A program made the translations under genes and the position numbers. A stretch of DNA of 64,000 nt, from assembly GCA_965637545.1 (NCBI GenBank), contig OZ281494.1, forward strand, positions 3,596,001 to 3,660,000, written 5' to 3'. Origin of the DNA: Phallusia mammillata. Taxonomy: Eukaryota. The notes under the pieces are model-generated. The model had not been told where the DNA came from. It did not search any database and saw only the letters and a program-made list of their open reading frames with translations. Below, one piece after another: positions 644 to 46,559 of this stretch (the first letter of the stretch is position 1; each line of letters starts with the position of its first letter).

Positions 644-1294
644 CTACTTCAGCAACTGGTTTAAAAGCCTATAAAACAGTGCGAGGGCTGTACATCTTCC
701 CAGCAAACGACAAGAGAAAATAGCACGTTCCATGAACACTTTCTGATATGCCTCGTTACTACGGTTTTGCCGGATGTAGTTGTTCATAGCAAAAGCTGTA
801 GCTGGTGCACCACCAATCAGTGTGAAAAGGTGAAGATGATCTTGTGTCCAACATTTCCAGCCAAAATTTTGGTCCCACACATTTACACCGAGAGTAACGA
901 TCAAAATGATCACAAAATATCGAACAAAAATCACGCATGTAGCTTCACCAAAAACAGAAAACACACAAATACAAACAACAATTTCTATGATGAAGACAGC
1001 GAGTCCTGTCAGGTAACACTGTTTCAATTGGTTTCTCTGATCCTAAACAATAAAAACGAAATAAATGTCTATGCTAGAAATTTTGTATTACGTTGTCAAG
1101 CTTCTTTAAAATTAACTTTCAGAGCTTTTAATCAATAGCAAGTATGACTAGTATGATTCATTCAAGAAGAAATATTTTAAAAAATAGACAATCAAAGTAC
1201 CAACTTTTCATCATAGGTGTCATTTATGTTAGGCCTAAATACCTATTTTTTATTTTTTGCCAAACCTAAATTAAGAATTTTGAATAGCTACCAT
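644..1294 (-). CDS. DUF1294/YsdA-like membrane protein, subfamily C (about 133 aa; exons 1294-1292 [ATG] and 1042-644)
   Basis: ORF 644-1027 contains YFVIILIVTLGVNVWDQ...LHLFTLIGGAPATAFAM. It stays open back to the acceptor ttgtttag|GAT at 1043/1042. The upstream tatcaaaaATG|gtagct is homologous to the ATG|gt sites at 6372 and 36188. Confidence 0.75.
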
Positions 1295-1550
1295 TTTTGA
1301 TATGATAGTTGTCTGTGTTTGTTCAATGAACAAAGTTGGTTGTAATCTGGTCAATTTTTAATCCTTTCGGTGTAAAATTTGTGGTGAAAACAACCTGGAG
1401 AAGGATATACCAATTAACAACTTTCCTACCTATTCATTAAATTTCACGGTATAGTTAACATTAGTGCACTTGCGATTTAAAAATGCTAAACATGAAAAAA
1501 TTACCAGTTTGTTTTGCGTTAAAATCAATTAAACTTTTTGGACAACAAGC

Positions 1551-1868
1551 CAGAGTTGTAAACGGGCCTGAAATTGGAGCCCGAACCCGGCCCAAACCCA
1601 AACGAAACAAGCCTGAAACCCGGCCCGAATCTGAATCGTTTTTGAGAGGCCCGTTAAGGCCCAAAAGTTTGATTGGCAGGCGTATAAGCCTCAGGAAAGA
1701 CCGAGACAACCAACACAATAGAATAGACAAAAGGTCTTGAACAAGGCGCTGTTTGACATTACGTCCGGTCCAGAAACTGGCTACTTAGCTAGTTAATTTT
1801 GTTCAAAAAAATACTGACACTGAGTGTAAAGTCAGGTCCAAATCAGGGCCGTTTTTTTTTCAACTCTG
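1551..1868. mobile_element. hAT-type MITE (TIR CAGAGTTG...CAACTCTG) with perfect 8-bp TSD caacaagc
   Basis: TSD at 1543-1550 and 1869-1876. Same family as 22062-22373 and a fragment near 36800-37020. Confidence 0.85.
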
Positions 1869-1879
1869 CAACAAGCCTC

Positions 1880-2570
1880 GATTTACCTTGAACGTTTCGG
1901 TCGTTCATATTCTGCAAACTGTTTTCCATCGATTACCATGAAACGCTTCTCCTGTTATACTCCACCCTTTAAACAAACGGTTCACCAAACCTCAATAACA
2001 TTGCGCTGTTGTTCAAGTTCATTTAACCAATCAAATCACGTGTAACGGTTGTTGACACGAACAAATGAAATTGGGTATAATATTGTTTGCAACATCAGGT
2101 AAACACATGTAATTTGGTCATGGCTTTTATCGGCGGTGACCTATACAATGAACAAAAGTTATGTGGTTTGCGAGCAACTGGCAGTCATTGTGCCTTGCCC
2201 ACATATTTCGGTGCTGGAAGTTGCCTCGGTTCTTTATGTTAACAGCAACGTCACAGAATTAAAGTTACGTCACAGAGCGAAACCATTGTTGCGGACTCGA
2301 GACTTTCCCGGTTTTTATACCCTCTTTCAGCGTTACCTATAACCCCCGTACTGGTGTCACCGTTGTGTAACGCCGTTGATGTGCGTGCAATTGTAAGGCA
2401 TATGTGGTTACAGGGTTATAAGCGGGCCCGAACCCAAAAGTACAACCCCTAAACCCGATTCGAACCTACATTTTAAGATAGAAATTCCCCTCGAATTATA
2501 GATTTACACAGGTGAAACTACTACACAGTTGTAAAGTCAGATTCGATTAAACCGGTTTCATTGAAACTAG
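1880..2570 (-). repeat. Conserved non-coding upstream module 'U' (inverted copy); direct-orientation copies at about 5400-6120, 35430-35950, 40800-41330 and 47330-47570
   Basis: The reverse complement of 2001-2180 aligns almost base for base with 5821-5995 (e.g. ...ttatacccaatttcatttgttcgtgtcaacaaccgttacacgtgatttgattggttaaatgaacttgaa). It lies upstream of subfamily-C genes and contains CACGTG and ATTGG (reverse CCAAT) motifs. Confidence 0.75.
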
Positions 2571-3004
2571 AGCCCGAATACTTTCTTTTTTCTTAGTTGC
2601 AAACAGACAAAATGTTTTGGGCTTAAAATTGAGATCCACTATAACAGGGCCAACAAAATCAGCAGAAAAAACCGGTTCATTTACCTTTTTAATTCCACAA
2701 CTTTTGAGGTTGCGTATATATTTCCGGCTTGGTGTTGATTTCTTTCATTAAATAGAAACAAACACACCTCAAGTTTTGCCATGTTTACATTTTGTCACGT
2801 GACAAAGGAAAACTACAGTTTCGTTGACGGGATTTTCCCTCTTAGCTTAACGCCTGGCTGACTTGTTGTTTCTGATACGCTTCAATCCTTCACTCCCGTC
2901 TTTTGTGTTATTTTCAGTTGCCTTACACAAACACCGCGCTACCAAGTATGTTTATTATTTACAAGTAATGCACACCCGAAAGTTATCACTCCTACGTCAG
3001 GAAC

Positions 3005-3643
3005 TTATTTATCAATGGTTTTCACAACAATCAAAATAACACAGACAATAACCAAAACACCAACAAGCAACACAGAAGCGCAAATGAAACCTTGTTTGTA
3101 AGTATATTTGCTGCGTTTATGTCTTATGGAACAGTCACTCATTACAAATACTTTTGCAGGCGCTCCACCAATCTGTGTAAAAATATGCAACACTATTTCG
3201 GGAACTCGCCAATAACAGCAGTCACAACATTCTTCTTTGGCAATACGTTTGTCAGTAATAAGAGTTGACAATAACAGTTGATAATAAAATGACAGTAAAA
3301 TATGCAGCCAAACCATGACCGAAAAGCACACAAATAAAGCAAAAATACATGCGGCAACTTCTAATGCAATGTCAATCCACCCAAACAGTACCACCAGCAA
3401 AGCAAATCTTTCTTGTCGCGATTTTCTAACAGTTGGTAGTGATGGTTTGCCTAAATTCGCCTAAAACCTAATTTTTTTAAGGCCCTAAAAGACATGTGTA
3501 TCAAACAATACCATACGTGAATAATGTGCGTAAGTGATAGATGAAAAGCGTTTCATTTGTAGATCAAAATACACTGATGATCTAAAGTTTACTAATTAGT
3601 AACAGAGGATTATAGGCTACGTTTAATCTATACCACTTACAAT
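3005..3643 (-). pseudogene. DUF1294-like pseudogene, subfamily D (start codon ATG->ATT; internal compensating indels)
   Basis: The first exon acacacaaaacatctaaaATT|gtaagtggtatagattaaacgtag matches acacacaaaacatttatcATG|gtaagtggcatagattaaacgtag of the 45980 gene. The body contains TDKRIAKEECCDCCYWRVPEIVLHIFTQIGGAPA..RHKRSK, with frameshifts relative to the 46107 exon. Confidence 0.8.
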
Positions 3644-3886
3644 TTTAGATGTTTTGTGTGTTCTGAGGATGCAAAGAAATCAAAATAGAATTGAGATTTT
3701 TGTTCCAGGAACCCAAACATTTTTATGCTCTTAAAACAAAAAAACTTTACCTGTGATTTTACAAACTTATAAACAATTTCTTTTCCATGCAACAGTCTAA
3801 TTGTATTTATTGTTTAGGGTTGGAGTAATTCCAACCAATATCAGTCACGTTTTGAGATGTAAGCTGCTCACAGGAAACATTTAGAC

Positions 3887-4857
3887 CAGTGGTTCCCAAA
3901 CTTTATCTACTCGCGTACCATTATTTGGGTTCATGCAGCGTTCTCGTACCACCTACAGTCCTACAATAATTGTTAGAAAACTCTTCACAAATTCACAAAT
4001 AAAAAATGATGGGCAAAATGTTTAATGAATAAAAATGTTACTAAACTTTACTAACTAACTTTATCTTTAGTAACCAAAAGCAAAATTTAGTCAAACTTTT
4101 ACCGCCCTCGCTACAGTGCTACTGTCAACACAACTAGTAGCTGATTACCAAATCTGACTTTAAGGATTTATTACGTCATAATAACAGATTCATAACGTCA
4201 TAATACACCTGTTTCGTCACAAAGAAACCCTGCTTTACAGTTCGATGCGTCAATACATCAAGGAATTAGAATTTAGTAGGGAATGTAGTATGAAATTTCA
4301 CGCTCTACGTAACTTGTGTGAATTAAAATAATGCTTACGATAATCACTAGAACAGGGGTCTCAAACTCAAACTGCTTTGGGGGCCAAAAATAAACTTCTA
4401 AGTAAGTCAAGGGCCGCACTATATCGATATCAAACAAAATATTGCAAGATTAAAAAATGAAATGTTCATTTGTGCCATTAGCTACATTAAAAACAATATT
4501 GTATTAAATAACAAACAGATATATGTATGAAATATGACGCAACAATCTCAATTGCTGATTCTAAAACTGAGCGAGTTTGATTATCTTGTGAAAACGTGAC
4601 ATATACCACTAATAGAAAAATGATTGTATTATGTAAACTTTCTAGTCAAAAACGGTATTCCGCCAGAGTAAAACACAACTTTTAAAAAGTTACTTCGGGG
4701 GCCGCACAAAAACCCTTGGCGGGCCGCGTGTTTGAGACCCCTGCACTAGAAGATCATTTGCGATCGTTTGGTGTGAACTGAATAAGTTGCTCGCGTACCA
4801 CGTTGGAGACCTTCGCGTACCACTAGTGGTACGCGTACCATAGTTTGGGAACCACTG
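3887..4857. mobile_element. Non-autonomous hAT element (TIR CAGTGGTTCCCAAACT), 8-bp TSD atttagac, inserted in a DUF1294 exon
   Basis: TIRs at both ends; TSD at 3879-3886 and 4858-4865. Removing the element restores AAA CAT TTA GAC GAA TGC TAT (KHLDECY). Confidence 0.9.
4353..4743. mobile_element. hAT MITE nested in the 3887-4857 element (TIR CAGGGGTCTCAAAC), 8-bp TSD cactagaa
   Basis: TIRs caggggtctcaaac / gtttgagacccctg; perfect TSD at 4345-4352 and 4744-4751. Confidence 0.9.
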
Positions 4858-6371
4858 ATTTAGACGAATGCTATGGTGCTGGAATTAAAGTGTTATATTT
4901 GGAGTGTGTCTTATGTGTGATTATGTATTGTGCTGTTGGTAAGTTTGCATGCATCTTATCCGCCGCGTATTTTGTTGGTGTTGGCTTCGTTACTATGATT
5001 TTAAATGTATATGACAAATGCCTTTCACGCAGTGGCTCCCGCGGGCGCATTTCAAAAAATATATACTCCATCGTTTCACGTTCATTGGTGATGCTCCGGC
5101 CACTGCTTTTGCTATGAATGATCCAATTCGACACAAATGTAGTAAAGTCTCCTATCAAGAGAGGTTTGTTTACTGTGCATTTGTTTGTTGCATTTTGCTG
5201 ATGTTGTGTTCTGTTTTCACACTATTTTATAGACAAGAACTTAAAAGTCTGATGGAAAAGTAGAATAGCTAAAAGGGCTTATCATTTAAATGTGTATCTT
5301 CAAAACGTATCATGTATAAAGATATTTTTGTGCGGTATGTCCAATGCTCTTTATTGCTGTATTATACGCGCTGACAAATATGTTAAAAACAAAAATGTAA
5401 TATTCGACTTAGGAACAAAAGGGTTCGGGCTCAAGTTTTAATAAAACGGGTTTAAATCGAGTTGACTTTACACTCGGCCACAATTGTGTAGTAGTTTCAC
5501 TTCTGTAAATCTAATTTGCGACGGGATTTCTAGTTTTAAATGCCGGTTTGGATCGGATTTCGGGCTTGTACTTTCGGGTTCGAGCCCGCTTATAACTCTG
5601 TATTCACATGTGCCCTACACTTGCACGCACATAAACGGCGTTACACAATGATGACACCAGTAAGGGGGGTTTATGTAAAGCTGATCACTGATCAGGGTAT
5701 GAAAATTGGGAAAGCACCAAGCTCGCAACAACGGTTTCGCTCTGTGACGTTGCTGTTAACATAAAGAACCAAGGTAACTTCCAACACCGAAATATGTGGG
5801 CAATGCACAATGACTGCTTGTTGTTCACAAACCACATAACTTTTATTCATTGTATAGGTCACCGCAGATAAAAGCCATGACCAAATTAAAAGTGTTTACC
5901 TGATGTTGCAAACAATATTATACCCAATTTCATTTGTTCGTGTCAACAACCGTTACACGTGATTTGATTGGTTAAATGAACTTGAATAACAGCGCAGTTA
6001 TTAAGGTTTGGTGAACCGTTTGTTTAAAGGGTGGAGTATGAAGAGAAGCGTTTCGGTGCAGTTGATGAAAATCAGTTTGCAGCAGAGAAACTACAGAAAC
6101 ATTCAAGATAAATCGAGGTTAGTTTATAAAAAAGTTTATTAATTGTAATGCAAACAGGCTGGTAATTTCTATTTTTCGCGTTTTGAAATTGCTAGTACAT
6201 AAATGGTAATTAAACCGCAATGTTATGTGAGATTTAATGAAAAGGTGTAGGACAGTTGTTAATTGCTATTTCGATTTCTAGGTTTTTTTCAAGCATCAAT
6301 TAAACACCGAAAGTGTTATAAATTAACCAGAAGTTTGTTCATTGTACAAGCACTAACAGCTGTCACATCAA

Positions 6372-6530
6372 ATGGTAACTACTTTTGATTCGGGCTTGGA
6401 CTATAACGAGCAAAATAGATATTTAACCTTAATAGTCAAACTGTTACTAAAATCGATTGTATTTTGGATAGAATGAAACTTTTCGAAAATACTTCTAGTT
6501 TAAATAAATAGAATTAATAAAAGCTGAAAC
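6372..6530 (+). pseudogene. Orphan ATG-only first exon and intron start of a subfamily-C gene whose coding exon is missing
   Basis: cagctgtcacatcaaATG|gtaact and about 150 bp downstream match 36188 onward. The sequence then switches to the unrelated B-type upstream module, and no DUF1294 exon follows. Confidence 0.65.
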
Positions 6531-7438: not shown

Positions 7439-8400
7439 ATGGTATTTACACTTTTCATAACTTTCCAGTGATTGTAAAATGCAAAAGTTGATATATGTAG
7501 CTATTGGGACGAAAATCTGGAAATCATTGGACGTTTTAAAGCAAGTGTAATAGCAGAGGCTCGAAAACACCTGCGCACTGTAAGTTGCGCCTATAGAGCC
7601 AACTTAATCACTAATTTTGTTGATTTAAAACAATTTGCATCAGATTAAACTGCGGCCCAACCAAAACAAAAGTTATATCTCTATAAGGTCCAGACGACGT
7701 ACGAAGGTGAAATTACGATACAAATGTTGGCAGTTTATAGCTAGACCCGATTCAAGCCCGTTTTGAAAAGGGTGGAATGACATAAATTTTTAGCTTAACC
7801 CTAAAGTGGGTGTTGAATTTCTGCTTGGTTAAGAAGCAAAATCAAAAAATATAACCTGCTTTAAAGCTGATTACAGCGAAAAAAATTACTTGTGATTTAA
7901 GCCCACTTAAATTAATTTCTTTTTCGTGCAACAGTCTAATTGTGTTTATTGTTTAGGAGTGTGGTAATTCCAACCAACATTGTTCACGATTTGAGAAGCA
8001 AGCTGCCAACAGGCAACTTTTAGAGGAATGCTATGGTGCTGGAATTATAGTGTTTACTTTTGAGTGTGTCTTTTGTGTGATCATGTATTTTGCTGTTGGT
8101 ATGCTTGCATGCATATTATCCGCGACATATTTTGTTGGTATTTGCGCTTTTACCTTGTTTTTAAATGCATATGACAAAAAACATGCGCGCCGTCGCTCCA
8201 GCGAGCGCATTCCAGAACGTGTGCTGCATGTTTTTACACTGATTGGTGGTGCTCCGGCCACAGCTTTTGCCATGAATGATTGCTGCATTCATCACAAATG
8301 TAGTAAAGGGCTCTATAAAAAAGTTTTTTTAAACCGTGCAGGTTGGTGCTGCTTTTGGTTGGTGATTTCTGCAGTTCTTTTGCTGAGTCTAATATATTAA
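7439..8400 (+). CDS. DUF1294/YsdA-like membrane protein, subfamily A (about 148 aa; exons 7439-7441 and 7957-8400)
   Basis: gaccgagaATG|gtattt is conserved upstream of all A-type copies. The acceptor gtttag|GAG opens a frame continuous with ORF 8050-8400 (LNAYDKKHARRRSSERIPERVLHVFTLIGGAPATAFAMNDCCIHHKCSK). Confidence 0.75.
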
Positions 8401-9106: not shown

Positions 9107-9661
9107 ATGGTAAGTAGAATTCATCTTACAGTTTTACGACATGACAGTATATGTAGCGGTATAATTTAAAATCTAAAAAGTAAGGTGCCATTACAAGTCC
9201 ATCTCATAGTATTTATAAGCTGTGCCCTTCGAAGAAAAAAAACGTTTTATACAAACATATCTTGTAACTTTTTTTACAAAAGTATTTACCACATGATAAC
9301 GAAATTTGTATTTAACCTTTAGGATCAAGGCAATTCAAACTCACATCACTTATTTTACGAACCACAAACTACAACAACAAGTTACTTTGATACTTGCCAG
9401 GGCGCGGGAATTTTCATATTTGTTCTGGAAATTGTATTTTGTGTAATTATGCTTTGTGCTGTTGGTGCAAATGCATATGGCATATTCTTGATATATTTTG
9501 TTCTCATTTGGATCCGGACTCTTGCTGTAAATGCTCTTGACAAGGGCCTAGCATGCGATGGCTCTCCCCAGCGAATACCAGAAGATATGCTGCATTTTTT
9601 CACACTGATAGTTTCCTATCAAAATAGGAAAGTAAAGTTTCCTATCAAAATAAGTTTTTGA
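9107..9661 (+). pseudogene. DUF1294-like pseudogene, subfamily B (core GGAPA...RHKC motif deleted, frameshift)
   Basis: ATG|gtaagt at 9107 and acceptor at 9322/9323. Compared with the 14846 copy, 55 nt are replaced by a 21-nt insert (9610-9630) copied from the downstream flank. Confidence 0.85.
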
Positions 9662-9760
9662 GTTATGCAAGCTATTGCTGCATTTGGCTGATGATTTTTG
9701 CCGGTATTGCAGTTCTTAACGCAAAATGGTTTGCAGTGTCCCTTGTTCTATCAATGTAGC

Positions 9761-12915: not shown

Positions 12916-13948
12916 ATGGTATTTACACTTTTCATAACTTTCCAGTGATTGTAAAATGCAAAAGTTGATATATGTAGCTATTGGGGCGAAAATCTGGAAA
13001 TCATTGGACGTTTTAAAGCAAGTGTAATAGCAGAGGCTCGAAAACACCTGCGCACTGTAAGTTGCGCCTATAGAGCCAACTTAATCACTAATTTTGTTGA
13101 TTTAAAACAATTTGCATCAGATTAAACTGCGGCCCAACCAAAACAAAAGTTATATCCCTATAAGGTCCAGACGACGTACGAAGGTGAAATTACGATACAA
13201 ATGTTGGCAGTTTATAGCTAGACCTGATGCAAGGCAGTTTTGAAAAGGGTGGAATGACATAAATTTTTAGCTTAACCCTAAAGTGGGTGTTGAATTTCTG
13301 CTTGGTTAAGAAGCAAAATCAAAAAATATAACCCGTTTTAAAGCTGATTACAGCGAAAAAAATTACTTGTGATTTAAGCCCACTTAAATTAATTTCTTTT
13401 TCGTGCAACAGTCTATTTGTGTTTATTGTTTAGGAGTGGGGTAATTCCAACCAACATTGTTCACGATTTGTGAAGCAAGCTGCCATCAGGCAACTTTTAG
13501 GCGAATGCTATGGTGCTGGAATTATAGTGTTTACTTTTGAGTGTGTCTTTTGTGTGATTATGTATTTTGCTGTTGGTATGCTTGCATGCATATTATCCGC
13601 GACATATTTTGTTGGTATTTGCGCTTTTACCTTGTTTTTAAATGCCTATGACAAAAAACATGCGCCCCGTCGCTCCCACGAGCGCATTCCAGAACGTGTG
13701 CTGCATTTTTTTACACTGATTGGTGGTGCTCCGGCCACAGCTCTTGCCATGAATGATTGCTGCATTCATCACAAATGTAGTAAAGGGCTCTATAAAAAAT
13801 TTTTTTAAACCGTGCAGGTTGGTGCTGCTTTTGGTTGGTGATTTCTGCAGTTCTTGTGCTGAGTCTAATATATGAAGCTAAATTGTCTAAACTTTCACAC
13901 TATTGCTACTCACAACTAGTGATGTTTTTACAAAAGTACATCAAATAA
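12916..13948 (+). pseudogene. DUF1294-like gene, subfamily A, with a 1-nt deletion near 13800 (possible pseudogene or sequencing error)
   Basis: ATG|gtattt at 12916 and acceptor at 13433/13434. It reads aaaaaattttttt where the twin reads aaaaaagttttttt, giving TAA at 13806-13808. The restored frame runs to TAA at 13946-13948. Confidence 0.7.
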
Positions 13949-14629: not shown

Positions 14630-15349
14630 ATGGTATGTAGAATTTATTCTGTAGTTTTTAAAGATACGAGATTACCAAATGTGTAGCGGGAAAGTCGAAT
14701 AATTTAACATTAACTGAGCGGTTACAAATGCATCTCATAGTATCTAAAAGCTGTGCTTGAAAAAAAAAAAACGTTTATAACACACTGACCTACGAAGAGT
14801 TTCTGTTTCAACCACAGAATAACGAAATTTGTGTTTAACCTTTAGGATCAAGGCAATTCAAACTCACATCACTTATTTTATGAACCACAAACTGCAACAA
14901 CAAGTTACTTTGATACTTGCCAAGGCGCGGGAATTTTCATATTTGTTCTGGAAATTGTATTTTGTGTATTTATGCTTTGTGCTGTTGGTGCAAATGCTTA
15001 TGGCATATTCTTGATATATTTTGTTCTCATTTGGATTCTGACTCTTGCTGTAAATGCTTTTGACAAGGGCCTAGCATGCGATGGCTCTCCCCAGCGAATA
15101 CCAGAAGATATGCTGCATTTTTTCACACTGATTGGTGGTGCTCCGGCCACAGCTTTCGCAATGAATGATCCTATTCGACACAAATGCAGTAAAGTTTCCT
15201 ATCAAAAGAAGTTTTTGAGTCATGCAAGCTGTTGCTGCATTTGGCTGATGATTTTTGCCGGTATTGCACTTCTTAACGCAAAATGGTTTGCGGTGTCCCT
15301 TGTCCTATCAATGTACCATTCCATTCACTACTACAAAAATAACGAGTAG
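14630..15349 (+). CDS. DUF1294/YsdA-like membrane protein, subfamily B (about 168 aa; exons 14630-14632 and 14846-15349)
   Basis: aaaaATG|gtatgt; acceptor cctttag|GAT; open frame with AVNAFDKGLACDGSPQRIPEDMLHFFTLIGGAPATAFAMNDPIRHKCSK; AATAAA about 30 nt after the stop. Confidence 0.85.
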
Positions 15350-19238: not shown

Positions 19239-20403
19239 ATGGTATTTATACTTGTAACTTTTCAGTTGTTGTAAATTACAAAACGTTGTTATACTTAGCT
19301 ATTGAGGCAAATATCTGGAAAATACGGGGCGTTCTAAAACATAGAAAAAATTCTGCAACCTGCTGCCTTTCGGATAGAAATTAAGTACCCCTTAGAGAGA
19401 GGGTTTAAGCTATAGTTGTTATGCATTGCGAAAACGCCCACAGCTAAAATTCTAAAATCATTTTTCGGCAAAGTTTTAATATTACTATGATCACTGCAAT
19501 GATCTAAACCATGGTTTAAACGCCACAAAACAGTGATAAAAAAATCGGGGCTCACGATTTTATAAGCCTAATTGTATATGACTCTCGCGAAATAAAAGTT
19601 GCACACCCTGCTCTGAGGTGCAACTCAAACTTATTTTTTTAAGTTATACCTATAGTAGTTCCACAAGACTTACTAAGGTAAATTTACAATAGAAAGATGG
19701 CTAAGTGTAAAGTCAGACCCAATTCAAGCCCGTTTTGTCCAGACTTAAGCCCGAACTGGTATAACAAAACTTTAGGCTAGGTCTAAAGAGTGTGTAATGT
19801 TTCTTGTGGGTGGATAATTTAAGAAACAAAACCGAAATATACAGCTTGAGTTAAAGCGGTTTGAGCCATGTAGTTTGACGGTATCAACGTGTGGTGTAGC
19901 AAAACCCACCTAAAATCATTCACGTGCTTTTCAAAACTTTATAATTGTGTTTTTTTGTTTAGGAGTGGAACAGTCACAACCAATATCGTCCACATCATTA
20001 TGGAGTCAATCGTTTAGACGATTGCTATGTTGCTGGTGGTTTTGTGTTTATCCTTGAGTGTTTGGTTTGTTACCTGGCTGGTAAACCTGAAAGTGACATA
20101 TGTGCGATATACTTCTTTGGTATTTGCTGTTTTACTTTGCTTCTAAATATCTTGGATAAAACCCTTGCAATTGTTGACTGTTGTTTACGCATACCAGAAT
20201 GTGTGTTGCATTTTTTGACCATATTTGGTGGTGCTCCCGCCACAGCTTTTGCCATGAATGATTGCTGCCCTCGACACAAACGCAGTAAAGTGCCTTATCA
20301 AGAATGGTTTTTGATTTGTGCGACTGTCTGTATCTTTGGGCTTATGGTGTGTTGTGTTGGCCTATTTGTTGTAAAAAATATCAAACAACTGCCAAAATAT
20401 TAA
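19239..20403 (+). CDS. DUF1294/YsdA-like membrane protein, subfamily A-related (about 147 aa; exons 19239-19241 and 19963-20403)
   Basis: ATG|gtattt in module M; acceptor tgtttag|GAG; LNILDKTLAIVDCCLRIPECVLHFLTIFGGAPATAFAMNDCCPRHKRSK; AATAAA about 45 nt after the stop. Confidence 0.8.
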
Positions 20404-27853: not shown

Positions 27854-28837
27854 ATGGTATTGATACTTACTTTGAATTTTTTTAGTTGTTGTAAATTACA
27901 AAACGTTGGTGATATTCAGTGATTGGAGAAAATTTCTGAAGAATACGGGGCGTTCGAAAATATAGACAACAACAGGGGCTCGGAAACAGCCGGTAACGGT
28001 GCGTTGTAACACCGTGAAGTATTTCTGCGCTGTGCAGATTAACTGGGCCGTTTAAAAACTACCCACAAACCATAAACAGGGGGTCTACTGGCTCAAAATT
28101 GTTGCCTGCACCCTCTTGGATAAAAATTGCGCATGCCGCGGACATGTCGGAATTAAAACTATACTTTGGCTCTCGACACTGTTTTAGGGCAGTGCTAGCG
28201 AGCGATTCAAATCTTTTATATTTTTGAGCAGATGTTTGCATCGCAAAATCGGCGAGAGCTGTTTTTGCTCGAGTTATAATGTCACTAGAATAACTTTGTG
28301 TCCTAAATCTAAAGTATATGACCCAAAACCCGATCTAATCTTTATTTGTTAACAGTTATGCCTGTACTGCATCCACAAGTTACACTTATTAAGACAAAAT
28401 GCGATACAAATGTGACTCAGAGTAAATTCAGGCCCGATGCAAGCCCGTTATATTTAAACGCAAGCCCGAATCTTTCATGAAAATGTGGACACGGCACCTG
28501 AAGCGAGGGTTTCTTTTTTTAAGTGCAAAATTTCAGAAGCAGAACCAGAAAATAAAGTCTAAATGTTTACAGTCGAATCAGTTACGCGACATCAATATAT
28601 ATTTCGGCGAAGTCATCTGAAAGCAATTTCTGTATAACACTCCAGTCTAATTGTGTTTTTTTGTTTAGGAGTGGAAAACCGTTCACTCCATGAAGAGCAA
28701 GCAGTCAATTATTTAAACGATTGCAATGACTTTGGTGTTTTTGTGTTTATCCTTGAGTTTTTTGTTTGTTGTCAGGTTGGTGGAATAGCAAGTGCCTTTC
28801 ACGTTCAGTATTTTGTTATTATTTTTATTGCTACTTT
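27854..28837 (+). pseudogene. 3'-truncated DUF1294-like pseudogene, subfamily A-related
   Basis: cccaaaATG|gtattg; acceptor at 28668/28669. The N-terminal part (LNDCNDFGVFVFILEFFVC...QYFVIIFIATLV) is out of frame with the acceptor and ends at a MITE-like sequence; the DK/RIPE/GGAPA core is absent. Confidence 0.75.
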
Positions 28838-29115
28838 GGTTTCGGCAACCCCTGGCACGCATGCCACGCAAGGTGGTTTCCGTGGCACTCCACCCGATTT
28901 GCGTGTTTATATTGAAGGAACATTTTCACATATTGCAGTTTTTATCATGTCATTGTCTTAAAATTAGCCTTACATGCACAAACACTACTTTCTCTTTATT
29001 ATTGATATCTGCTGGCACGAACCACTATTATTTAGAAAAACGTTGGCACGCGAGGTCTTTGACACGTGGAGATAAAAGTAAATTGGCACGCGTCGCCTAA
29101 CAGGTTTACCACAGT
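28838..29115. mobile_element. Degenerate MITE remnant truncating the 27854 pseudogene
   Basis: Ends resemble hAT-MITE termini (tcggcaacccctggcacgcatgcc ... ggcacgcgtcgcctaacaggtttacca). No clean TSD. Confidence 0.45.
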
Positions 29116-31918: not shown

Positions 31919-32823
31919 ATGGTATTTGTACTAACTTTTCAGTTGTTGTAAATTACAAAAATTAATATATTTAGCTATTGGAGCAAAAAAGTGGGAAATA
32001 CCGAGCTTTCCAAAGCAAATAGGCAGAGGCTCGGATACACCTGGTCATGGTGGTTGCAAACCATTTTTTATTAAGTAAAAATTGAGTCCATTAAGTAATA
32101 ATATCACCGGACGTACAAACACGAAACCAGCCCGATCTAAAAAAGTAATACCTGTGTCAGGTCTACATGACTTACCAAGGTGAAATTACGATACAAATGT
32201 CTCACAGACTAACGTTGGACCCGATTAAAGTCCGTTTTGAAAGGACGGCATGACACAAAACCTGATTACAGCGAATTAATAAAGTGATTAAAATTTTAAA
32301 AAAAATGATCCTGATCAAAAAAGGGCTTGTGATTTTACAAAGCCCGTTAAAAGATAATTTGTGCCACAGTCTAATTGTGTTCATTGTTTAGGAGTGGGAT
32401 AATTCCAACCAACATCGTTCACAATTTAAGATGCAAGCTGCCAACAAGAAGCGTTTAGACAAACACTATATTGCTGGAGTTATAGTGTTTATTTTTGAGT
32501 GTGTCTTATGTGTGATTATGTATTATGCTGTTGACAAACACGCATGCATTGTATGCGTGGCATATTTTGTTGTCATTTGCATCGTAACTTTGTTGTTAAA
32601 TTTATTTGACAAATGCCTTGCTTGCAGTGGCTCCAGCGAGCGCATTCCAGAGGTTGTGCTGCACTTTTTGACACTGATTGGTGGTGCTCCGGCCACAGCT
32701 TTAGTCATTAATGATCCCATTCGACACGAATGCAGTAAAGTTTCCTATCGAGAGGCGTTTGTTTGTCTGTGCATTTGTTTGTTGCATTTTGCTGATACGT
32801 GCTGTTTACACACTATTTTGTAG
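31919..32823 (+). CDS. DUF1294/YsdA-like protein, subfamily A (about 144 aa; exons 31919-31921 and 32392-32823), C-terminal helix frameshifted
   Basis: ATG|gtattt; acceptor tgttta g|GAG; LNLFDKCLACSGSSERIPEVVLHFLTLIGGAPATALVINDPIRHECSK. A +1 nt change near 32765 relative to the 5018 paralog alters the last helix, and RHK has become RHE. Confidence 0.65.
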
Positions 32824-34506: not shown

Positions 34507-35081
34507 ATGGTAACTAACAGCTGCGTTTGTTTTTAATATTTAAATCAAAACTCTAGGTTCAACCGTCGTTTCTTAATGACTACCATTTTTTAACGTTGGT
34601 TTCGTTTTGATATTTACGTGTTTTTGCGTTATAGGATTGGATAGAAACCGACAGGCATCCATTTTATGACGAAAGCCACGACCCAAGCTACTTGGATACT
34701 TGCTATGCTGTCGGATTTGTAACTTTATACTTGGAACTTGTCGTTTGTGTTTCAGCCCATTCCTACGCAAAATCGCCCGTCTTTGGGATCTACATAGTAA
34801 CTGTTCTACTTTTTACCTTGATTATCAACATTGCGGACAAACTGTTGATTTATGAAGGAAAAAATGGTATCCCTGAATATTTTTTACACGCTCTGACAGT
34901 AGTTGGTGGAGCGCCATCTAGCGCATTTGCTATGAACCATTGTTGTATTCGACATAAACGCAGAAAGGCCAGCTATCAAAATGACTTTATAACATATGCA
35001 ACTATAGGTTGTTCTTTTTTAGGGGGCATGCTTTGCCAAATACTGTATTCTGGGAGCAGTTACCAGAAACAACCAAGTTGA
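34507..35081 (+). CDS. DUF1294/YsdA-like membrane protein, subfamily E (about 149 aa; exons 34507-34509 and 34635-35081)
   Basis: aaaacATG|gtaact; acceptor gttatag|GAT; INIADKLLIYEGKNGIPEYFLHALTVVGGAPSSAFAMNHCCIRHKRRK; AATAAA about 40 nt after the stop. Confidence 0.85.
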
Positions 35082-36187: not shown

Positions 36188-36792
36188 ATGGTAGGCTAAG
36201 TACCTTTGATTCTGACTTGAAATATAGCGAGCAAAATAGAGATTCAACCTTAGTAGTGAAACTGCTACAAAAATCGATTGTATTTGGAAAGAATGGAACT
36301 ATTTAAAAAAAGATTTCTTGTTTAAATAATTAGAATTATTAATTAAAAGCTGTTAATGTAAAGTTCTGAAAACTATTTTTTTGAAATAAGCTCAACAAAC
36401 TATTTTAAAATTTTGAAAGATCACGTTTGTTTTCGTTTCTTGTTGTTTAGGACGAGAAAAACGAATTGGAAAAATGCTATCTGGCTGGATGCAAAGTGTT
36501 TTCTATGGAACTTGTTTTTTGCATTTGTGTGTTTTATATTTTTGGTGAAGCTACATGCGGGATTTTTGTTCCATATTTCGTGATTATTTTGACCTCTACT
36601 CTCGGTGTAAATGTCTTGGACCAAATCTTCACACGTCGTGGATGGCAACATTTGTCAAAATATGGCCTGCATTTATTCACACTTATTGGTGGTGCCCCGG
36701 CCACAGCTCTGGCCATGAACAGCTATATCCGGCAAAACCAACGTAACGAGAGATATCAGAAAGTGTTCCTGGATTGTGCTTGTTTCTCGTAG
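36188..36792 (+). CDS. DUF1294-like protein, subfamily C, C-terminally truncated (about 114 aa; exons 36188-36190 and 36451-36792)
   Basis: catcaaATG|gtaggc; acceptor gtttag|GAC; LHLFTLIGGAPATALAM. The last TM helix present in the 644 paralog is replaced by a MITE fragment just after the stop. Confidence 0.6.
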
Positions 36793-37221: not shown

Positions 37222-37903
37222 ATGGTAAGTAGAATTTATTCTGTAATTTTGGTGTCGAAAATCTAAATAGTTCGGAGCAATTACAAGTGGATTTCATAGC
37301 ATGTAAACATTGTAAAGGCTGTGCTTGAACAAAAAAATGTTTAAAACACACTCACCTACGAAGTGTTTTTGTTTCAACCACAGGATAACGAAATTTGTCT
37401 TTTACCTTTAGGATCAAGGCAATGGAAATTCAAATCACTTGATTTACGAACCACAAACGGCAACAACAATTTACTTAAAAGCTTGTCAAGGGGCAGGATT
37501 TATCATTTTTGTCATGGAAATTGCAATTTGTGTATTTATGCTTTGTGGTGTTGATGAAAATGCGTTTGGCTTATTCTTATATTTTGTTCTCATTTGGACC
37601 CTGACTCTTGCTTTAAACGCTTTTGATCTAGCATGCAATGACTCCCCCATGCGTATACCAGAAAATGTGCTGCATTTTTTCACGCTGATTGGTGGTGCTC
37701 CGGCTACAGCTTTAGCCATGAGCGATCCTATTCGACACAAACGCAGTAAAGTTTCCTATCAAAAAAAGTTTCTGGAACATGCAGGCATTGGGTGCTTTTG
37801 TCTGTTGACTTCTACCGCCCTACACTTTCTTATTACAAACTGGTTTAAGTTGTTAATTGTCTTATCAATGTGCCTTTTCAAACGCTACTACACAAATAAC
37901 TAG
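37222..37903 (+). CDS. DUF1294/YsdA-like membrane protein, subfamily B (about 164 aa; exons 37222-37224 and 37412-37903)
   Basis: aaaATG|gtaagt; acceptor cctttag|GAT; LNAFDLACNDSPMRIPENVLHFFTLIGGAPATALAMSDPIRHKRSK; AATAAA about 60 nt after the stop. Confidence 0.85.
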
Positions 37904-38930: not shown

Positions 38931-38949
38931 GCCAAAACACACATAATAA

Positions 38950-40346: not shown

Positions 40347-41653
40347 GCTCCTGACGTAGCAGTGGTTACTTTCGTGGATGCATTACTTGTAAATAATAAA
40401 TATACTTTGTTGCGCGGTGTTAATAGAAAATTATAAGAAACTTTCTTAAATCGATTTTGCATCTTAAATCGATTTTGCATCAACCCTAAAAGAGCAAGAG
40501 CATGTCTAAACATTATTTTTGTCAAATAAAATCGGCAGTTAAGGGTTAATTTAAAGCACAACTGAAACCAAATAACACAAAAAAACGGGAGTGGAGGAGT
40601 AAAGCGTATCGAAAACAACAAGTCAATTAAGCGATAAGCTGAGAGGGAAAATCCCGTCAACGAAACTATAGTTTCCCCATGTCACGCGACAAAACAAAAA
40701 AAATGCATTTTTTATCTCAAAACCAGTGTTACGTTAATCGTTGCTCGTGCTTTTTGAATCCACGTTAACACAATACTATTGCATGGACGGGTTCGAGCCC
40801 GTGTTGAGGTTGATACGGGTAAAGCTGCAGAGGGTATGAAACCGGAAAAGCCCCAAGCTCGCAAAAAGTTTCCGTTGCTGTTGAGAAGGCAACCAAGGCA
40901 ACTTCCCAAACCGAAATATGCGGGCAAGGTATAAACATGATTACATCGATGCTTAGGAACAAAATTTAGTTTTAAAGTAATTCAAAGCACTGTACAGTAC
41001 TTCTCGTTGCATACACCATATACCTATTCCTTTTTATTCATCGTCGACATAGGTCATGGCTTAGTTAAATGCGTTTACGTAGTGTTGCTACCAATATTAT
41101 ACCCAACTCTATTTGTTCGGGCTAACAACCGTTAAATGAGATTTGATTGGTCCAGTAAACTTGAATAACAGCGTAGCTATTGAAATTTGGCGCACCTGTT
41201 GTTTTAAGGGGAGGGGTATGACTACAGAACAGTTTCGGTTTAGTCGATGGAAAACAAGTGAAAAACAGTTTGTAGAAGAGGAGCCACGGAAAGGTTCAAG
41301 GTAAAACAAGTAACGAGGCTAGTCTTAAAAGTTGGATTGATTTTATTGTAAACAAGCAGGCAATTTTTATGTTTGTGATACAGGGTTAAATTCCTCTGTT
41401 TCAGTCTGACTCTTTCAATATTCACTCAATGTTAAACGGTCGGAAAGTAAATTTTCAGTTTCCGATTATATACCTGTTGGACTCGTTTGCCAGTAAATTT
41501 GAAATCCAAGCGTGTCGGCGGGCCGCACAACCTTTATTCAAGGTCTGCAGGTTGCACACCCCTGCCTTATAGTAAGTTGTAAAAAAATTCTTGAGGCAAA
41601 ACCTAAACATATTCCCTTTTTTATTGTTTTAGGATCGTGACATTTCAAACGAG

Positions 41654-42115
41654 ATGCGTCCACAAGCTACCAACGCAAGCTATGCAAACGCTTGCAATAG
41701 AGCTGCATGCAAAGTATTTTTTGCTGAGTTTCTCTTTTTATTGTTTAAGTGTTGTGCAGTTGGTTTTGCTGAAGGTGCCGAATTCCTTGTTTTTTTCGTT
41801 CGTCTTTGGTTCTTTACTTTGATTTTAAATATCTTGGATCAAATTCTCGCATGTACTGGCTTTTGCCGTCGTATACCCGAAGGTGTGTTGCACTTTTTCA
41901 CAGTGGTAGGTGGTGCCCCGGCCACAGCGATAGCTATGAATGATTTCTTCACCAGACATAACCGCAATAGTGTGGCTTATCAGAAAGTTTTTATTGACCG
42001 TGCAAACAAATGTTGCTCGTATCTGGTGTTTAAGGCAGTTATTTTATATTTCTTCAAAAAACACATTGAAAACTGTTTCCTAAAAGCCATTGAATTGATT
42101 TTCAATAACCACTAA
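41654..42115 (+). CDS. DUF1294/YsdA-like membrane protein (153 aa from the internal ATG; acceptor at 41632/41633, first exon not found)
   Basis: LNILDQILACTGFCRRIPEGVLHFFTVVGGAPATAIAMNDFFTRHNRNS. The frame is open from ttttag|GAT. No ATG|GT was found in the upstream module, which ends in a MITE terminus. Confidence 0.7.
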   Translation: MRPQATNASYANACNRAACKVFFAEFLFLLFKCCAVGFAEGAEFLVFFVRLWFFTLILNILDQILACTGFCRRIPEGVLHFFTVVGGAPATAIAMNDFFTRHNRNSVAYQKVFIDRANKCCSYLVFKAVILYFFKKHIENCFLKAIELIFNNH

Positions 42116-42657: not shown

Positions 42658-42932
42658 GAGTTGTGTAACCTTCACAGATGTCGCAAACAATTTTCACGAT
42701 CTTTCAGCTGTAAAATGTAGTAGTTTTGTAATTGTTTTAAAAGACAAAATGCTTTAGTTGAAAATCGACCAACAATGTAATGCTTGCGGTACGACTAAGC
42801 TCTGGCCGTGCAAAGTTCTTTCGGCAGCTCTAAAATACAAGAAAATGCAAAACCATTCAGGCGTATAAAGTGTAGAGGTTGTGACAAGCGAGGGATAGTC
42901 CCGTCATCGAAACAACAGTTTTGCCGTTTGAC

Positions 42933-44667
42933 CATAGTATACTAACATGGTAGTCCAGCTATTGTTACCGTCACGCTTGATTAACTCTGCACGCTTATCG
43001 GATGGTTGCATGGAGTTGGGTGCTTTAAGAGCAGGAAAATGACAAAACTGAGCGTGCGTGGTCGGTTTTATATCTACCATGTGTAATATTACTACGTTTG
43101 GTTGAAATTGTGCTGTTGGGGAGAATTTACTGAGTTTTTTGCCTTTTAGTCCTTTTTTAAACGCGTTGAAGTGATTTTAGCGTGCTTTTACCTAACATAT
43201 TCAAGGGTGCATCAGCTTGTTACTGAGTAAGTTAAAGTCTGGTGAAAATTGAACTTTGCCAAACTGACTGCATTTTTAATGAACTGATATTTAACGACTT
43301 TGACCCCGACCAGGAACTCGATTCGGACAGACGAAAAGTCAAGCTTAAACGAAGACCATATTTTTTTCCAAAGTTACTCATTTCAAACTGTCAACAAGCG
43401 GCTGATTTTTCACAAAAGAACTGATTAGATGAGAAACTAAGCAAAAGAGTGCTGTGAAGCAAAAAGTTTATTTGAAAAAAATTCAAGGTACAAAAACAAT
43501 TGCTAGACATCATAAACAATAAAACAGTTAAATGCTGTGATAAGTAACATGGAGTTTAGAGTATTTAAAGGTGATGTTTTGTTCAAGGCAAAAAACAATT
43601 TTACAAAAGTAAGCAAAATTGTTAGCAAGTTGCCCACCATGCACTTACAGCAGGGCAAGCTGATTTCTTCAATGGAGCAAAGCCCTGGAGGTCTCACTTA
43701 TTCTTCATCAGAGTTACTGCAACTTTTACAAAGTGTGTACCTGAAATGCTTGAGAAAGAGTTGTTGGCCAACCAACAAGCTAGACTTTTTTGTGTATTCC
43801 AAAAGTTTTTCCATGATCTTTATTATGAAAGTTTCTAAAATAGGACATGTGATATTCTGGAAGTTGATGTGGATAAAGAGAAAGTACTCAATAGGTTTTA
43901 ATACTCGTGGATTTATTTATTTGTGTCTTGTCGTTCACGTTTGCCGAAAAGCTCTTTTCTAAAATGTTCCAAAGGTCTACCAAGGAAACCAAAAAAATGG
44001 GCTCTGAAAAATATATCAAAATAAAACTGTCAAAAGTGTCTGTACTTTTTGCACAATGTGCTTCTTTTTTCAAATTACAAAAAATGATGCCTCACCAAAA
44101 TCTGTTCAATACCACAAATGGGTATAAACCACAGAAAACAACTGATTTTTAATGCCTAATTAAGCAACTGCTGGGGAACCAAAGTGATGGCAATATGATT
44201 AATAAGCCAATAGATAGAGGATAAGTAATCTGCAAATACTGCTCGCTGTTTTGACAAGGTCTCATCAGTGCACCTGATGACAAGACACAGGCCATGTTGG
44301 CTAGTGTAGTAACATGCTGAAAAACCTTGACTCGCCAATTCGGATCATTGCCTCAATTTTAAAGCAATTTCTACAAGAAGATGCCTGTCTATAAGTTTTT
44401 AAAAATACACTTCAAAGAGTTCATACAATTTAAAGCTAAAAACGTTTTAATAGCTCTACATACATTAAACAATAAACCCAATAACTAAAAAACTTCAAAA
44501 CGGACACGGATTTGTCGCCAGCGGCCTTTAAAAACTAGCTGTTTACCACGTACCTCATACAAAACTTCAGGCGACGTGCAGTGTTAGTCATGCGTAACCG
44601 AAATGCGCAGGATAATAAAAGAAACGAGAGGAAAAGAGGAGCTGGACTACCATGTTAGTATACTATG
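42933..44667 (+). mobile_element. Defective P-superfamily-like DNA transposon: 28-bp perfect TIR CATAGTATACTAACATGGTAGTCCAGCT, 7-bp TSD gtttgac
   Basis: TIRs and TSD (42926-42932 and 44668-44674) read directly; inserted in module M. The internal ORF 43537-43962 (GDVLFKAKNNF.K.SK.VS.L...GGLTYSSSELLQLL) resembles the C-terminal region of P/THAP9-type transposases (by-eye similarity only). Confidence 0.7.
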
Positions 44668-45979
44668 GTTTGACATTGCAAATATTACTTTTTACACGAT
44701 ATGGTTTTGAGGACCTAAAACAATACAATCAACTATTTTGTTATCAGGTTTAGAGGTGTTCCGGTTAACAACAGTTCCTCTGCACTGCCCTCTTGCGGAA
44801 TGCAGGTTCAATATTTTCTGTGCAAAATAATAATATCTATGTTGCTCCATCTAGTGTGTTACCACAGCTAGTTTGTGTGTAAGGCCACATCTAATGTTGC
44901 TCATGTGGTCCTCAGTGTTCTCAGGAAGTTCGTGTGTTTGTCAAGACACATGCAAATCAATGCTGCGTATAAAATGGTGTGTGGTCACAGCGTGCACATC
45001 TAACGTCTTATAGTTGTCATCAGTGTACTCAGGGGGCTTTTGTGTATGTCCCGACACATTGAAAAACACAAAGAAACTTTTTGTTTAAATCTGTGAATAT
45101 ATAACTACATTACGCGGCGCGTTTTTTCGATGATGTATCTTAATGCATCACGACACGTGACTTACTAAATCGTCACTTCCTTGACGTTAAACAACACCAT
45201 AGTGCAGAGGTATAAACGTTTGGAGCACTGAATGGGTTTATTGGTGTTAATGGCTTCCAACACAACTGACAGCGAAAAATAATAAAAATCATCGAATAGT
45301 AACACTTGGTTGGCAAGACAGTCAGACGTGACAAAATCTTGAAACCTGTCGGCGTTTACAAAAGTTTGTCTATGTGAGTTATGGCGACAAAACAATCTCC
45401 TCCATTTTTTTCCATCCATTAGAAAATCGCTGAAGCGCAAACTGTTTTCATTGTAAACATACCAGCTTTTTGTATTGACGTAGAATCAAAACAAACGTCA
45501 CCAAAACTTCAGTGTGTCCATGATGGTCTTATCAATGGTATATTTCACCAAGATCTCAGTCTTCAATATCAAATCTTCAAGGTACGTTCGTAATTGTAAT
45601 GTAATAGTTTAAAAGTTTTATTGTTTGTGGGCATTGTTGGAAAAGAAAAAATCTCTCAGCTTCGTCGATGACGGGTTTTTAACAATTATTTGTTTCCAGT
45701 TCTATCTAATTTTTCCAGTTTGTAACGATCTTTAAATTTCATCAATAACGTTCATGATCATGCCAGACAAGGTTTAAATCATATGTTACATCTTTGTTTT
45801 ACTCGATTGTTTTGATTCTTTTAGTGGACTTTTATATTACAACCACTTAAGCATATGATAACGACTTTTTTGTTTTTTTTACGAATTTCATTCCAGAGCA
45901 TAAAAAAATTGCGTTCCTGGAAAAAAAATCAATTCTAATTTGATTTCTTTGCACTTTCAGAACACACAAAACATTTATC

Positions 45980-46559
45980 ATGGTAAGTGGCATAGATTAA
46001 ACGTAGCCCATAATCCTCCTTTACTAATTAGTAAACTTTAGATCATCAGTAAATTTTGAATGAATTTCCATCAAATACATATAATTTATAGTCACCTATA
46101 TTTTAGGCGAACCATCACCACCAGCAACTGTTGGAAAACAAAAATCACGACAAAGAAGATTTGCTTTGCTGGTGTTACTTTTTGGGTGCAGTAACATTTG
46201 TGTTGGTGGTTGTTACTTGTTGTTTGCTGTATTTCTGTAATTTGCAAATTTCCAGTTTAAGTTTGGCTGCTTATTTTGTAATTATTATATTATTGACTCT
46301 AATTGTCAACGTTACTGACAAGGGCATTGCTAAAGAAGAATGTTGTGACTGCTGTTGGCGAGTGCCAGAAAAAGTGCTGCACTTTTTCACACTGATTGGT
46401 GGAGCGCCTGCAACAGCACTTGCAATGAGTGATTGTTGTATTAGACATAAACGCAGCAAATATACCTACAAAAAGAATTTTATTTCTGTTGCTGCATTGC
46501 TTGATACCCTTTTGCTTGCTATTTGTATTTACTTGGCGCACACTATTGCTGTAAAATAA
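45980..46559 (+). CDS. DUF1294/YsdA-like membrane protein, subfamily D (about 151 aa; exons 45980-45982 and 46107-46559)
   Basis: ttatcATG|gtaagt; acceptor ttttag|GCG; VNVTDKGIAKEECCDCCWRVPEKVLHFFTLIGGAPATALAMSDCCIRHKRSK; AATAAA about 45 nt after the stop. Confidence 0.85.

What the first reader, a model, noticed from the sequence alone, without database searches (positions are those of the whole stretch)
1292..45982. Start-codon-only first exon (ATG|GT) conserved across all main DUF1294 subfamilies
Seen: each main-type coding exon begins at a phase-0 AG acceptor with a G-starting codon and no upstream in-frame ATG. An ATG immediately followed by GT lies 125-810 nt upstream at 1294(-), 7439, 9107, 12916, 14630, 19239, 27854, 31919, 34507, 36188, 37222 and 45980, even though the surrounding promoter sequences differ between subfamilies. 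The whole protein is otherwise one exon. Inference: this is what an intronless (prokaryote-derived or retroposed) ORF captured by a host promoter and ATG exon would look like. It also makes standard ORF callers mis-start every gene.
Basis: partly seen in the sequence, partly recalled or inferred. Interest (0 to 1): 0.7.

Follow-up and report, generated by a model that had tools for sequence, protein, structure and literature searches.

The report
Start-codon-only first exons in DUF1294 genes
In this sea-squirt-type genome a tandem family of small membrane-protein genes (DUF1294) keeps only its ATG start codon on a short upstream exon, with the rest of the protein on one exon; this layout is a known kind of gene structure, so the finding mainly matters for annotating these genes correctly.

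Summary
All 12 claimed ATG|GT sites exist, and all read ATG|GTA. Each lies 124-812 nt upstream of a DUF1294 body exon whose open frame begins right after a ttTAG acceptor.

Chance does not explain this. ATGGTA occurs about 3e-4 times per nt. In an unbiased list of ATG-to-GT phase-0 candidates, the claimed site is the best or tied-best donor for every intact gene. In four genes the first in-frame Met of the body exon lies at residue 86-107, inside the domain, so the start codon must come from upstream.

Paralogues act as natural experiments and agree. One copy has ATT at the homologous site. One chimera pairs an A-type ATG exon with an E-type body exon. One copy carries a 4.3-kb insertion between the ATG and an intact body.

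No transcript data could be reached, so splicing is inferred, not shown.

The genome carries the Ciona 16-nt spliced leader (3179 copies followed by GT). Trans-splicing onto the body exon would give no start codon.

An outgroup paralogue and homologues elsewhere keep the ATG inside the body exon, so the ATG-only exon is a derived state.

"Start codon introns" were described in 2006. This is a new member of a known kind.

The parts
644..1294 (-). C-type gene. ATG 1294-1292. Intron 1291-1043 (249 nt, GTAGCT...TTTAG). Body CDS 1042-647, stop 646-644.
7439..8400 (+). A-type gene. ATG 7439-7441. Intron 7442-7956 (515 nt, GTATTT donor). Body CDS 7957-8397 plus TAA. A second donor-like site CACT|GTAAGT lies at 7579/7580.
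9107..9661 (+). B-type copy. ATG 9107-9109. Intron 9110-9322 (213 nt, GTAAGT). Body 9323-9658 is frameshifted or truncated, so probably a pseudogene.
12916..13808 (+). A-type copy. ATG 12916-12918. Intron 12919-13433 (515 nt). Body 13434-13805 is truncated at the C-terminus.
14630..15349 (+). B-type gene. ATG 14630-14632. Intron 14633-14845 (213 nt, GTATGT). Body CDS 14846-15346 plus TAG.
19239..20403 (+). A-type gene. TATAAAT box at -62. ATG 19239-19241. Intron 19242-19962 (721 nt). Body CDS 19963-20400 plus TAA. First in-frame Met of the body is at residue 98.
27854..28961 (+). A-type pseudogene. ATG 27854-27856. Intron 27857-28668 (812 nt, GTATTG). Degenerate body from 28669.
31919..32823 (+). 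A-type gene. ATG 31919-31921. Intron 31922-32391 (470 nt). Body CDS 32392-32820 plus TAG. A second ATG|GTGGTT lies at 32047.
34507..35081 (+). D-type gene. ATG 34507-34509. Intron 34510-34634 (125 nt, GTAACT). Body CDS 34635-35078 plus TGA. First in-frame Met of the body is at residue 100.
36188..36792 (+). C-type gene. TATAAAT box at -54. ATG 36188-36190. Intron 36191-36450 (260 nt, GTAGGC). Body CDS 36451-36789 plus TAG, which is short at the C-terminus.
37222..37903 (+). B-type gene. ATG 37222-37224. Intron 37225-37411 (187 nt, GTAAGT). Body CDS 37412-37900 plus TAG.
45980..46559 (+). E-type gene. Acceptor-like ctttcag ends at 45960, 19 nt before the ATG. ATG 45980-45982. Intron 45983-46106 (124 nt, GTAAGT). 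Body CDS 46107-46556 plus TAA. First in-frame Met of the body is at residue 107.
3005..3643 (-). E-type copy that has lost the start. The site homologous to 45980 reads ATT (3643-3641) followed by GTAAGTGG. Body 3460-3008 has a divergent N-terminal half. Another ATG|GTATTG lies at 3514-3512, only 51 nt before the acceptor.
41429..42115 (+). F-type gene without an ATG|GT exon. No ATGGT within 1.5 kb upstream. tata|GTAAGT lies 60 nt upstream. The best alternative is a 6-codon exon (ATG at 41429, donor AAA|GTAAAT, intron 186 nt), or the body's own Met at residue 8. Body CDS 41633-42112.

Best explanation
Proposed gene model (inferred from DNA): each main gene of the array has two exons. Exon 1 is a short 5' UTR ending in the initiator ATG. 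It is roughly 20-35 nt if transcription starts about 30 nt after the TATAAAT-like box of the A and C types. The splice donor GT(A) follows the ATG directly. A phase-0 intron is removed by ordinary cis-splicing; it is 54 nt to 5.5 kb long and 124-812 nt in this window. The ATG is then joined to the first codon of a single body exon that encodes the whole DUF1294 membrane protein (about 130-170 residues). The spliced message reads A..ATG|G, a good initiation context.

Shown from DNA:
- The donor, acceptor and branch-point-like signals.
- The open frames.
- The absence of a usable Met in the body exon.
- The behaviour of paralogues.

Inferred:
- That the splice actually occurs.
- Where transcription starts.
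- Whether exon 1 is itself capped or receives the spliced leader at an AG 12-25 nt upstream of the ATG.

Proposed origin (inferred): one ancestral unit of this form was multiplied by tandem and segmental duplication. That ancestor came from a gene with the ATG in the body exon.
For: 1. All 12 sites read ATG|GTA. Each is bounded by an upstream in-frame stop, so only one codon is contributed. Each is the best or tied-best donor among all ATG-to-GT phase-0 candidates in 1.2 kb for the intact genes. B, D and E types score 5-6 of 7.

2. Body-exon frames open exactly at ttTAG| in 13 of 15 copies. A conserved CTAAT branch-like motif lies in A types.

3. N-terminal residues next to the acceptor are shared between subfamilies ([DE]-[WQ]-G-N-S-N in A and B types). 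The first in-frame Met is at residue 86-107 in four genes. Translation must therefore enter from upstream.

4. The chance of ATGGTA at these distances is about 2e-8 over six unalignable groups. A and C types share a TATAAAT/TAAATTGACCAGATTA box 52-68 nt before the ATG.

5. Natural experiments:
- L001 carries an A-type promoter and ATG exon fused, inside the intron, to an E-type body exon. The E-type ATG|GT there has decayed and the ORF is intact.
- The L024/L031 copy has a 4.3-kb insertion between ATG|GTATTT and an intact body exon.
- Copy 3460(-) has ATT at the start site and a divergent protein.
- The pseudogene L029 on contig C4 has an ATG exactly where C types have the acceptor TAG, and also its own upstream ATG|GTAAGT.

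6. Spliced-leader trans-splicing uses only acceptors that have no upstream donor (PMC1488885).
Against: - No RNA evidence. No protein of this species is in the searched collections, so no gene model or transcript could be consulted.
- A- and C-type donors are weak (GTATTT, GTAGCT, GTAGGC; 4 of 7).
- A-type introns keep a conserved block of about 150 nt ending at a second donor-like site. Its role is unknown.
- Paralogues are not independent. Within subfamilies the flanks are conserved too, so conservation of ATGGT there says little.
- B, D and E types show no recognisable promoter.
- Two genes in the window lack the feature.
- Several copies are pseudogenes.
Confidence: 0.8

Rival explanations
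1. The body-exon acceptor is a spliced-leader trans-splice site. The upstream ATG|GT is discarded with the outron, and translation starts at an internal or non-AUG codon.
For: The genome carries the Ciona-type leader ATTCTATTTGAATAAG followed by GT 3179 times, including a 553-bp tandem array (leader sequence from PMC1488885). Homologues on the contigs of sample DRR090687 have tttag, then 8 nt, then ATG. This looks like a typical trans-splice acceptor.
Against: - The leader ends in AAUAAG, and joining it to G... makes no AUG.
- The first in-frame Met of the body exon lies at residue 86-107 in four genes, inside the DUF1294 core.
- The frame is open and conserved from the first codon after the acceptor.
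- An upstream donor is present, and this normally turns such an acceptor into a cis acceptor (PMC1488885).
Confidence: 0.05
2. Some subfamilies, above all the A type with its weak GTATTT donor, use another or a longer first coding exon or another donor. ATG|GTATTT would then be only the start of a short upstream ORF.
For: - In A types the roughly 150 nt after ATG|GTATTT are conserved and end at a donor-like site. It reads CACT|GTAAGT at 7579/7580, ATG|GTGGTT at 32047, and ACG|GT in two other copies.
- Gene 41633 has no ATG|GT but has a possible 6-codon exon.
Against: - Only one A-type copy has an ATG at the second site. The others read ACG or ACT, which gives no start.
- No other ATG-to-GT candidate is shared among A-type copies.
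- ATGGTATT is the longest invariant block in the A-type alignment.
- The A-type ATG exon is the one retained in the chimera L001.
Confidence: 0.1
3. The array is largely dead DNA. The ATG|GT sites are chance matches copied along by recent duplication.
For: - Several copies are frameshifted or truncated (9323, 13434, 28669).
- Large segmental duplications inflate the count.
- A bare ATGGT occurs 1.2 times per kb.
Against: - More than 20 copies keep open frames of 130-170 codons across subfamilies that are only 27-50% identical.
- Groups whose flanks no longer align all keep ATG|GTA close to the acceptor.
Confidence: 0.03

Closest known systems
Start codon introns: phase-0 introns between codons 1 and 2 (Nielsen & Wernersson 2006, BMC Genomics 7:256, PMC1626468)
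   Same: The intron directly follows the initiator ATG, is phase 0, and the second codon starts with G (ATG|G fits a proto-splice site). The proteins are short and have no signal peptide. The authors' idea that the 5' UTR plus ATG acts as an exchangeable module fits the L001 chimera seen here.
   Different: The published class is enriched in conserved, lysine-rich, often ribosomal proteins. These are lineage-specific, fast-diverging three-helix membrane proteins in a tandem array. The feature here is inferred from DNA, not from transcripts.
Ascidian spliced-leader trans-spliced genes (Satou et al. 2006, PMC1488885)
   Same: Same leader sequence in the genome. Same kind of pyrimidine-rich AG acceptor close to the start of the coding region. 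Relatives in another sample have an acceptor 8 nt before their ATG.
   Different: Here the body exon has no ATG after the acceptor and a donor lies upstream. The acceptor is therefore expected to be cis-spliced. The leader could at most be added upstream of the ATG exon.
DUF1294
   Same: Pfam matches above the cut-off. The conserved core is DK..A....R[IV]PE..LH..TLIGGAP...AM..HK.SK flanked by hydrophobic helices.
   Different: The eukaryote-type branch has Cys-rich loops and a variable N-terminal tail. It is expanded here to about 45 copies in 0.3 Mb. The function of the family is unknown.

Membership tests
Start codon intron (Nielsen & Wernersson 2006) | Splice donor GT immediately after the initiator ATG, with no further coding sequence in exon 1 | tested here: met
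   All 12 sites are ATG|GTA with an upstream in-frame stop, so exon 1 holds one codon. This is shown at DNA level only.
Start codon intron (Nielsen & Wernersson 2006) | Phase-0 acceptor followed by the in-frame remainder of the protein | tested here: met
   The open frame starts exactly after ttTAG in 13 of 15 copies. N-terminal residues are conserved from codon 1 of the body exon.
Start codon intron (Nielsen & Wernersson 2006) | The intron is actually removed in the mRNA | not testable with these tools
   No transcript or gene model of this species is in the reachable collections.
DUF1294 (PF06961) | Pfam HMM match above the gathering score | tested here: met
   8 of 10 body exons score 28.5-47.1 bits against a cut-off of 25. 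One scores 24.0 and one has no hit. The whole genome holds 26 Pfam matches and 58 profile matches.
SL trans-spliced acceptor (ascidian) | Acceptor with no partner donor upstream in the pre-mRNA, and a start codon downstream of the acceptor | tested here: not met
   A donor-bearing ATG lies 124-812 nt upstream. There is no usable ATG after the acceptor. The leader itself is present in the genome.
Recently captured prokaryotic or retroposed ORF | Nearest relatives are prokaryotic, or the parent gene carries introns that the copy lacks, and the ATG exon is foreign to the family | tested here: not met
   The best hits of the profile search share the eukaryote-type motif. The only named one is Ciona XP_026689846.1. 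The outgroup paralogue and other homologues have their own ATG in the body exon. No poly(A) tail or retrocopy marks were looked for.

The most novel reading that the evidence does not exclude
The start-codon exon may be a freely exchangeable module in this array. It could have arisen when a pre-existing 5' UTR exon gained a terminal ATG and the acceptor slid onto the old ATG site; the C4 copy L029 would be an intermediate. It can be swapped between subfamilies by recombination within introns, as in L001. In some types (E type, and the C4 copy L029) it may be an internal micro-exon of about 15-25 nt that itself receives the spliced leader at the AG just upstream. The mature mRNA would then be leader, then about 20 nt, then ATG, then the body exon. 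Copies without their own ATG exon (41633, 3460-) might borrow a neighbour's.
Probability: 0.2. Interest if true: 0.5.

Novelty: new member of a known kind. Interest (0 to 1): 0.3.

Why it matters
Mainly for annotation. ORF finders and many gene predictors will mis-start or miss about 45 genes of this family, or fuse neighbours; the 287-residue two-domain Ciona model may be such a fusion.

The array is also a compact natural series for studying how start-codon introns arise and behave in a genome that also uses spliced-leader trans-splicing. It contains an exon-1 swap, a start-lost copy, an intron hit by a 4.3-kb insertion, and an acceptor that sits where a relative has its ATG.

It does not reveal a new mechanism.

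Tried and rejected
- Word-based protein search with the 14846 body exon found nothing.
- The Ciona gene for P0002 is not on record, so its intron positions could not be compared.
- Pairwise local alignment of upstream regions between subfamilies was significant only for A versus C. Conservation of ATG|GT in B, D and E could not be shown by alignment and rests on statistics and donor ranking.
- The tree of paralogues and outside homologues is poorly resolved. An AU test does not reject that this genome's cluster is one clade (p = 0.09). A single origin versus several origins of the ATG exon stays open.
- The idea that L029 or L012 are retrocopies of spliced mRNA was rejected. L029 keeps an intron and its own upstream ATG|GT, and L012 has an acceptor-like site 32 nt before its ATG.
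- Exons were searched apart, by reference.
- No structure prediction was made, because the question concerns gene structure and not fold.
Full report
**What the window is**

The window is G000:C1:3596001-3660000 of a 240-Mb assembly with about 36% G+C. The 16-nt leader ATTCTATTTGAATAAG is the Ciona intestinalis spliced leader (Table 1 of PMC1488885). Followed by GT, it occurs 3179 times in this genome, including a 553-bp tandem array on contig C3. The reversed control pattern occurs 0 times. This agrees with earlier notes of this scan that call the genome a sea squirt.

**The observation**

Stop-to-stop frames show about 15 DUF1294-like open frames in the window. Eight of 10 tested pass Pfam's PF06961 cut-off.
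- In 13 of 15 the frame opens exactly after a pyrimidine-rich ttTAG. The next codon starts with G in all 12 body exons paired with the claimed sites.
- The in-frame codon before the body exon is therefore a stop, so no upstream in-frame ATG is possible in unspliced DNA.
- All 12 claimed positions read ATG|GT, and all are ATG|GTA.
- ATG-to-acceptor distances are 124-812 nt.

**Is it more than chance?**

A bare ATGGT occurs 1.2 times per kb per strand, so one within 800 nt would mean little. Three results go further.
- **Background rate.** ATGGTA has a background rate of 3.2e-4 per nt. At the observed nearest distances P is 0.02-0.14 per group. The product over six groups whose upstream regions do not align is about 2e-8. 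The grouping was chosen after seeing the data.
- **Unbiased candidate list.** I listed every stop-free ATG...GT phase-0 first-exon candidate in the 1.2 kb upstream of each gene. The claimed one-codon exon is the top donor for the B, D and E types (5-6 of 7 consensus positions). It is tied for top in the intact A and C types.
- **No usable Met in the body exon.** The body exon cannot supply a start. Its first in-frame Met is at residue 86, 98, 100 and 107 in four genes, inside or beyond the DUF1294 core. Residues right at the acceptor are shared between subfamilies ([DE]-[WQ]-G-N-S-N in A and B types). The coding region thus begins at the acceptor, and the Met must be spliced in.

**Promoter context**

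A and C types share a TATAAAT/TAAATTGACCAGATTA box 52-68 nt before the ATG. Their upstream regions align collinearly from -80 to -10 (z 4.6-6.2). This fits a TATA promoter with a 5' UTR of about 30 nt.

B, D and E upstream regions show no significant similarity to the others.

In the E type and in the C4 copy, a good acceptor-like cag lies 13-19 nt before the ATG. I cannot tell whether the ATG exon there is capped or receives the spliced leader.

**Natural experiments among paralogues**

The whole genome holds 58 profile matches. About 45 gene copies lie in C1:3.50-3.80 Mb, and a large segmental duplication is present.
- **Start lost.** In the 3008-3460(-) copy, the site homologous to 45980 reads ATT|GTAAGTGG. 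Its protein has a divergent N-terminal half.
- **Exon-1 swap.** L001 (C1:3.524 Mb) has an A-type promoter, ATG|GTATTT and the first 100 nt or so of the A-type intron. These are joined to the 3' part of an E-type intron and an intact E-type body exon. The E-type ATG|GTAAGT inside it has decayed. This shows the ATG exon is interchangeable.
- **Insertion in the intron.** The duplicate of gene 19963 at C1:3.744 Mb has a 4.3-kb insertion between ATG|GTATTT and an intact body exon, giving an intron of about 5.5 kb. This is as expected for an intron.
- **ATG at the acceptor site.** L029, a pseudogene on contig C4, has an ATG exactly where C types have the acceptor TAG. It also has another acceptor 24 nt further upstream and its own ATG|GTAAGT 485 nt upstream.

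**Relatives elsewhere**

A profile of 14 body exons found 2846 proteins at E up to 1e-3. The best hits carry the same eukaryote-type motif. Only one hit is named: Ciona intestinalis XP_026689846.1, a two-domain model.

Two close hits come from Logan contigs of sample DRR090687. Both have tttag, then 8 nt, then an ATG contiguous with the ORF. Two hits on long ENA contigs, and this genome's own divergent paralogues L012/L013, also have the ATG in the body exon.

The ATG-only exon is therefore derived within an already eukaryotic family. A tree and an AU test (p = 0.09) cannot decide whether it arose once.

DUF1294 has been listed as a candidate bacterial transfer in Dictyostelium (PMC3188802). 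It has also been counted in medusozoan cnidarians (PMC7642931). An old prokaryotic origin of the domain is possible, but it is not what produced the ATG exon.

**Mechanism**

The most likely mechanism is ordinary cis-splicing of a start-codon-only coding exon to one body exon. The start context after splicing is A at -3 (10 of 12 sites) and G at +4.

Trans-splicing onto the body exon would give a message without a start codon. It is also disfavoured because a donor lies upstream (PMC1488885).

The main residual doubt concerns the A types. Their donor GTATTT is weak, and a conserved 150-nt block after it ends at a second donor-like site.

**Comparison with what is known**

Phase-0 introns directly after the start codon are an established, over-represented class in animals, fungi and plants (Nielsen & Wernersson 2006, PMC1626468). 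Those authors suggested that ATG|G acts as a proto-splice site and that the 5' UTR is an exchangeable module. Both ideas fit here. The proteins differ from the typical class, which is short, lysine-rich and often ribosomal.

**Limits**

No transcript evidence could be reached. I did not search the joined Met-plus-body sequence or the junction as a pattern.

**Verdict**

The gene model is probably right (0.8). The origin story is not supported. This is a new member of a known kind, with value mainly for annotation.

Noticed in passing
G000:C1:3596-3612 kb (window 1-16000) versus C1:3718-3735 kb: A large segmental duplication. The DUF1294 copies match pairwise with near-identical scores and identical open-frame lengths, so counts of 'conserved' sites are inflated.
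   Followed up: partly
window 7442-7590, 19242-19400, 27857-28005, 31922-32060: The first 150 nt or so of A-type introns are conserved. They end at a second donor-like site: CACT|GTAAGT at 7579/7580, ATG|GTGGTT at 32047, and ACG|GT at about 28001. The block could be an alternative donor, an intronic enhancer or a decayed second start exon. It remains unexplained.
   Followed up: partly
window 19177-19195 and 31851-31870 (and the other A and C units): The motif AATTGACC(C)AGA occurs twice per A-type unit: once next to the TATAAAT box (about -66) and once directly before the ATG (about -14). It may be a shared factor-binding site.
   Followed up: no
G000:C3:11108338-11147465: A tandem array of spliced-leader RNA genes with a 553-bp period. 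The genome holds 3179 copies of the leader followed by GT in all.
   Followed up: no
window 11301-11863(-) and 22704-23272(-): Two near-identical ORFs of 178-180 residues, with neighbouring repeated ORFs at 12283-12746 and 23687-24142.
   Followed up: no
L031/L024 (G000:C1:3739.4-3743.7 kb): A 4.3-kb insertion inside the intron of the duplicate of gene 19963. Its nature (possibly a transposon) was not examined.
   Followed up: no
P0002 (Ciona intestinalis XP_026689846.1): A 287-residue model with two DUF1294 units in one protein. It may be a predicted fusion of two tandem genes because the second unit's start was not found. The Ciona locus could not be fetched.
   Followed up: partly
L003 / L026 (G000:C1:3713 kb and 3592.6 kb, the latter just upstream of the window): A G-type copy with an 85-residue N-terminal extension that has an extra hydrophobic segment. 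The extension is in frame after ttttag|CTC. An ATG|GTAAGT lies only 54 nt upstream.
   Followed up: no
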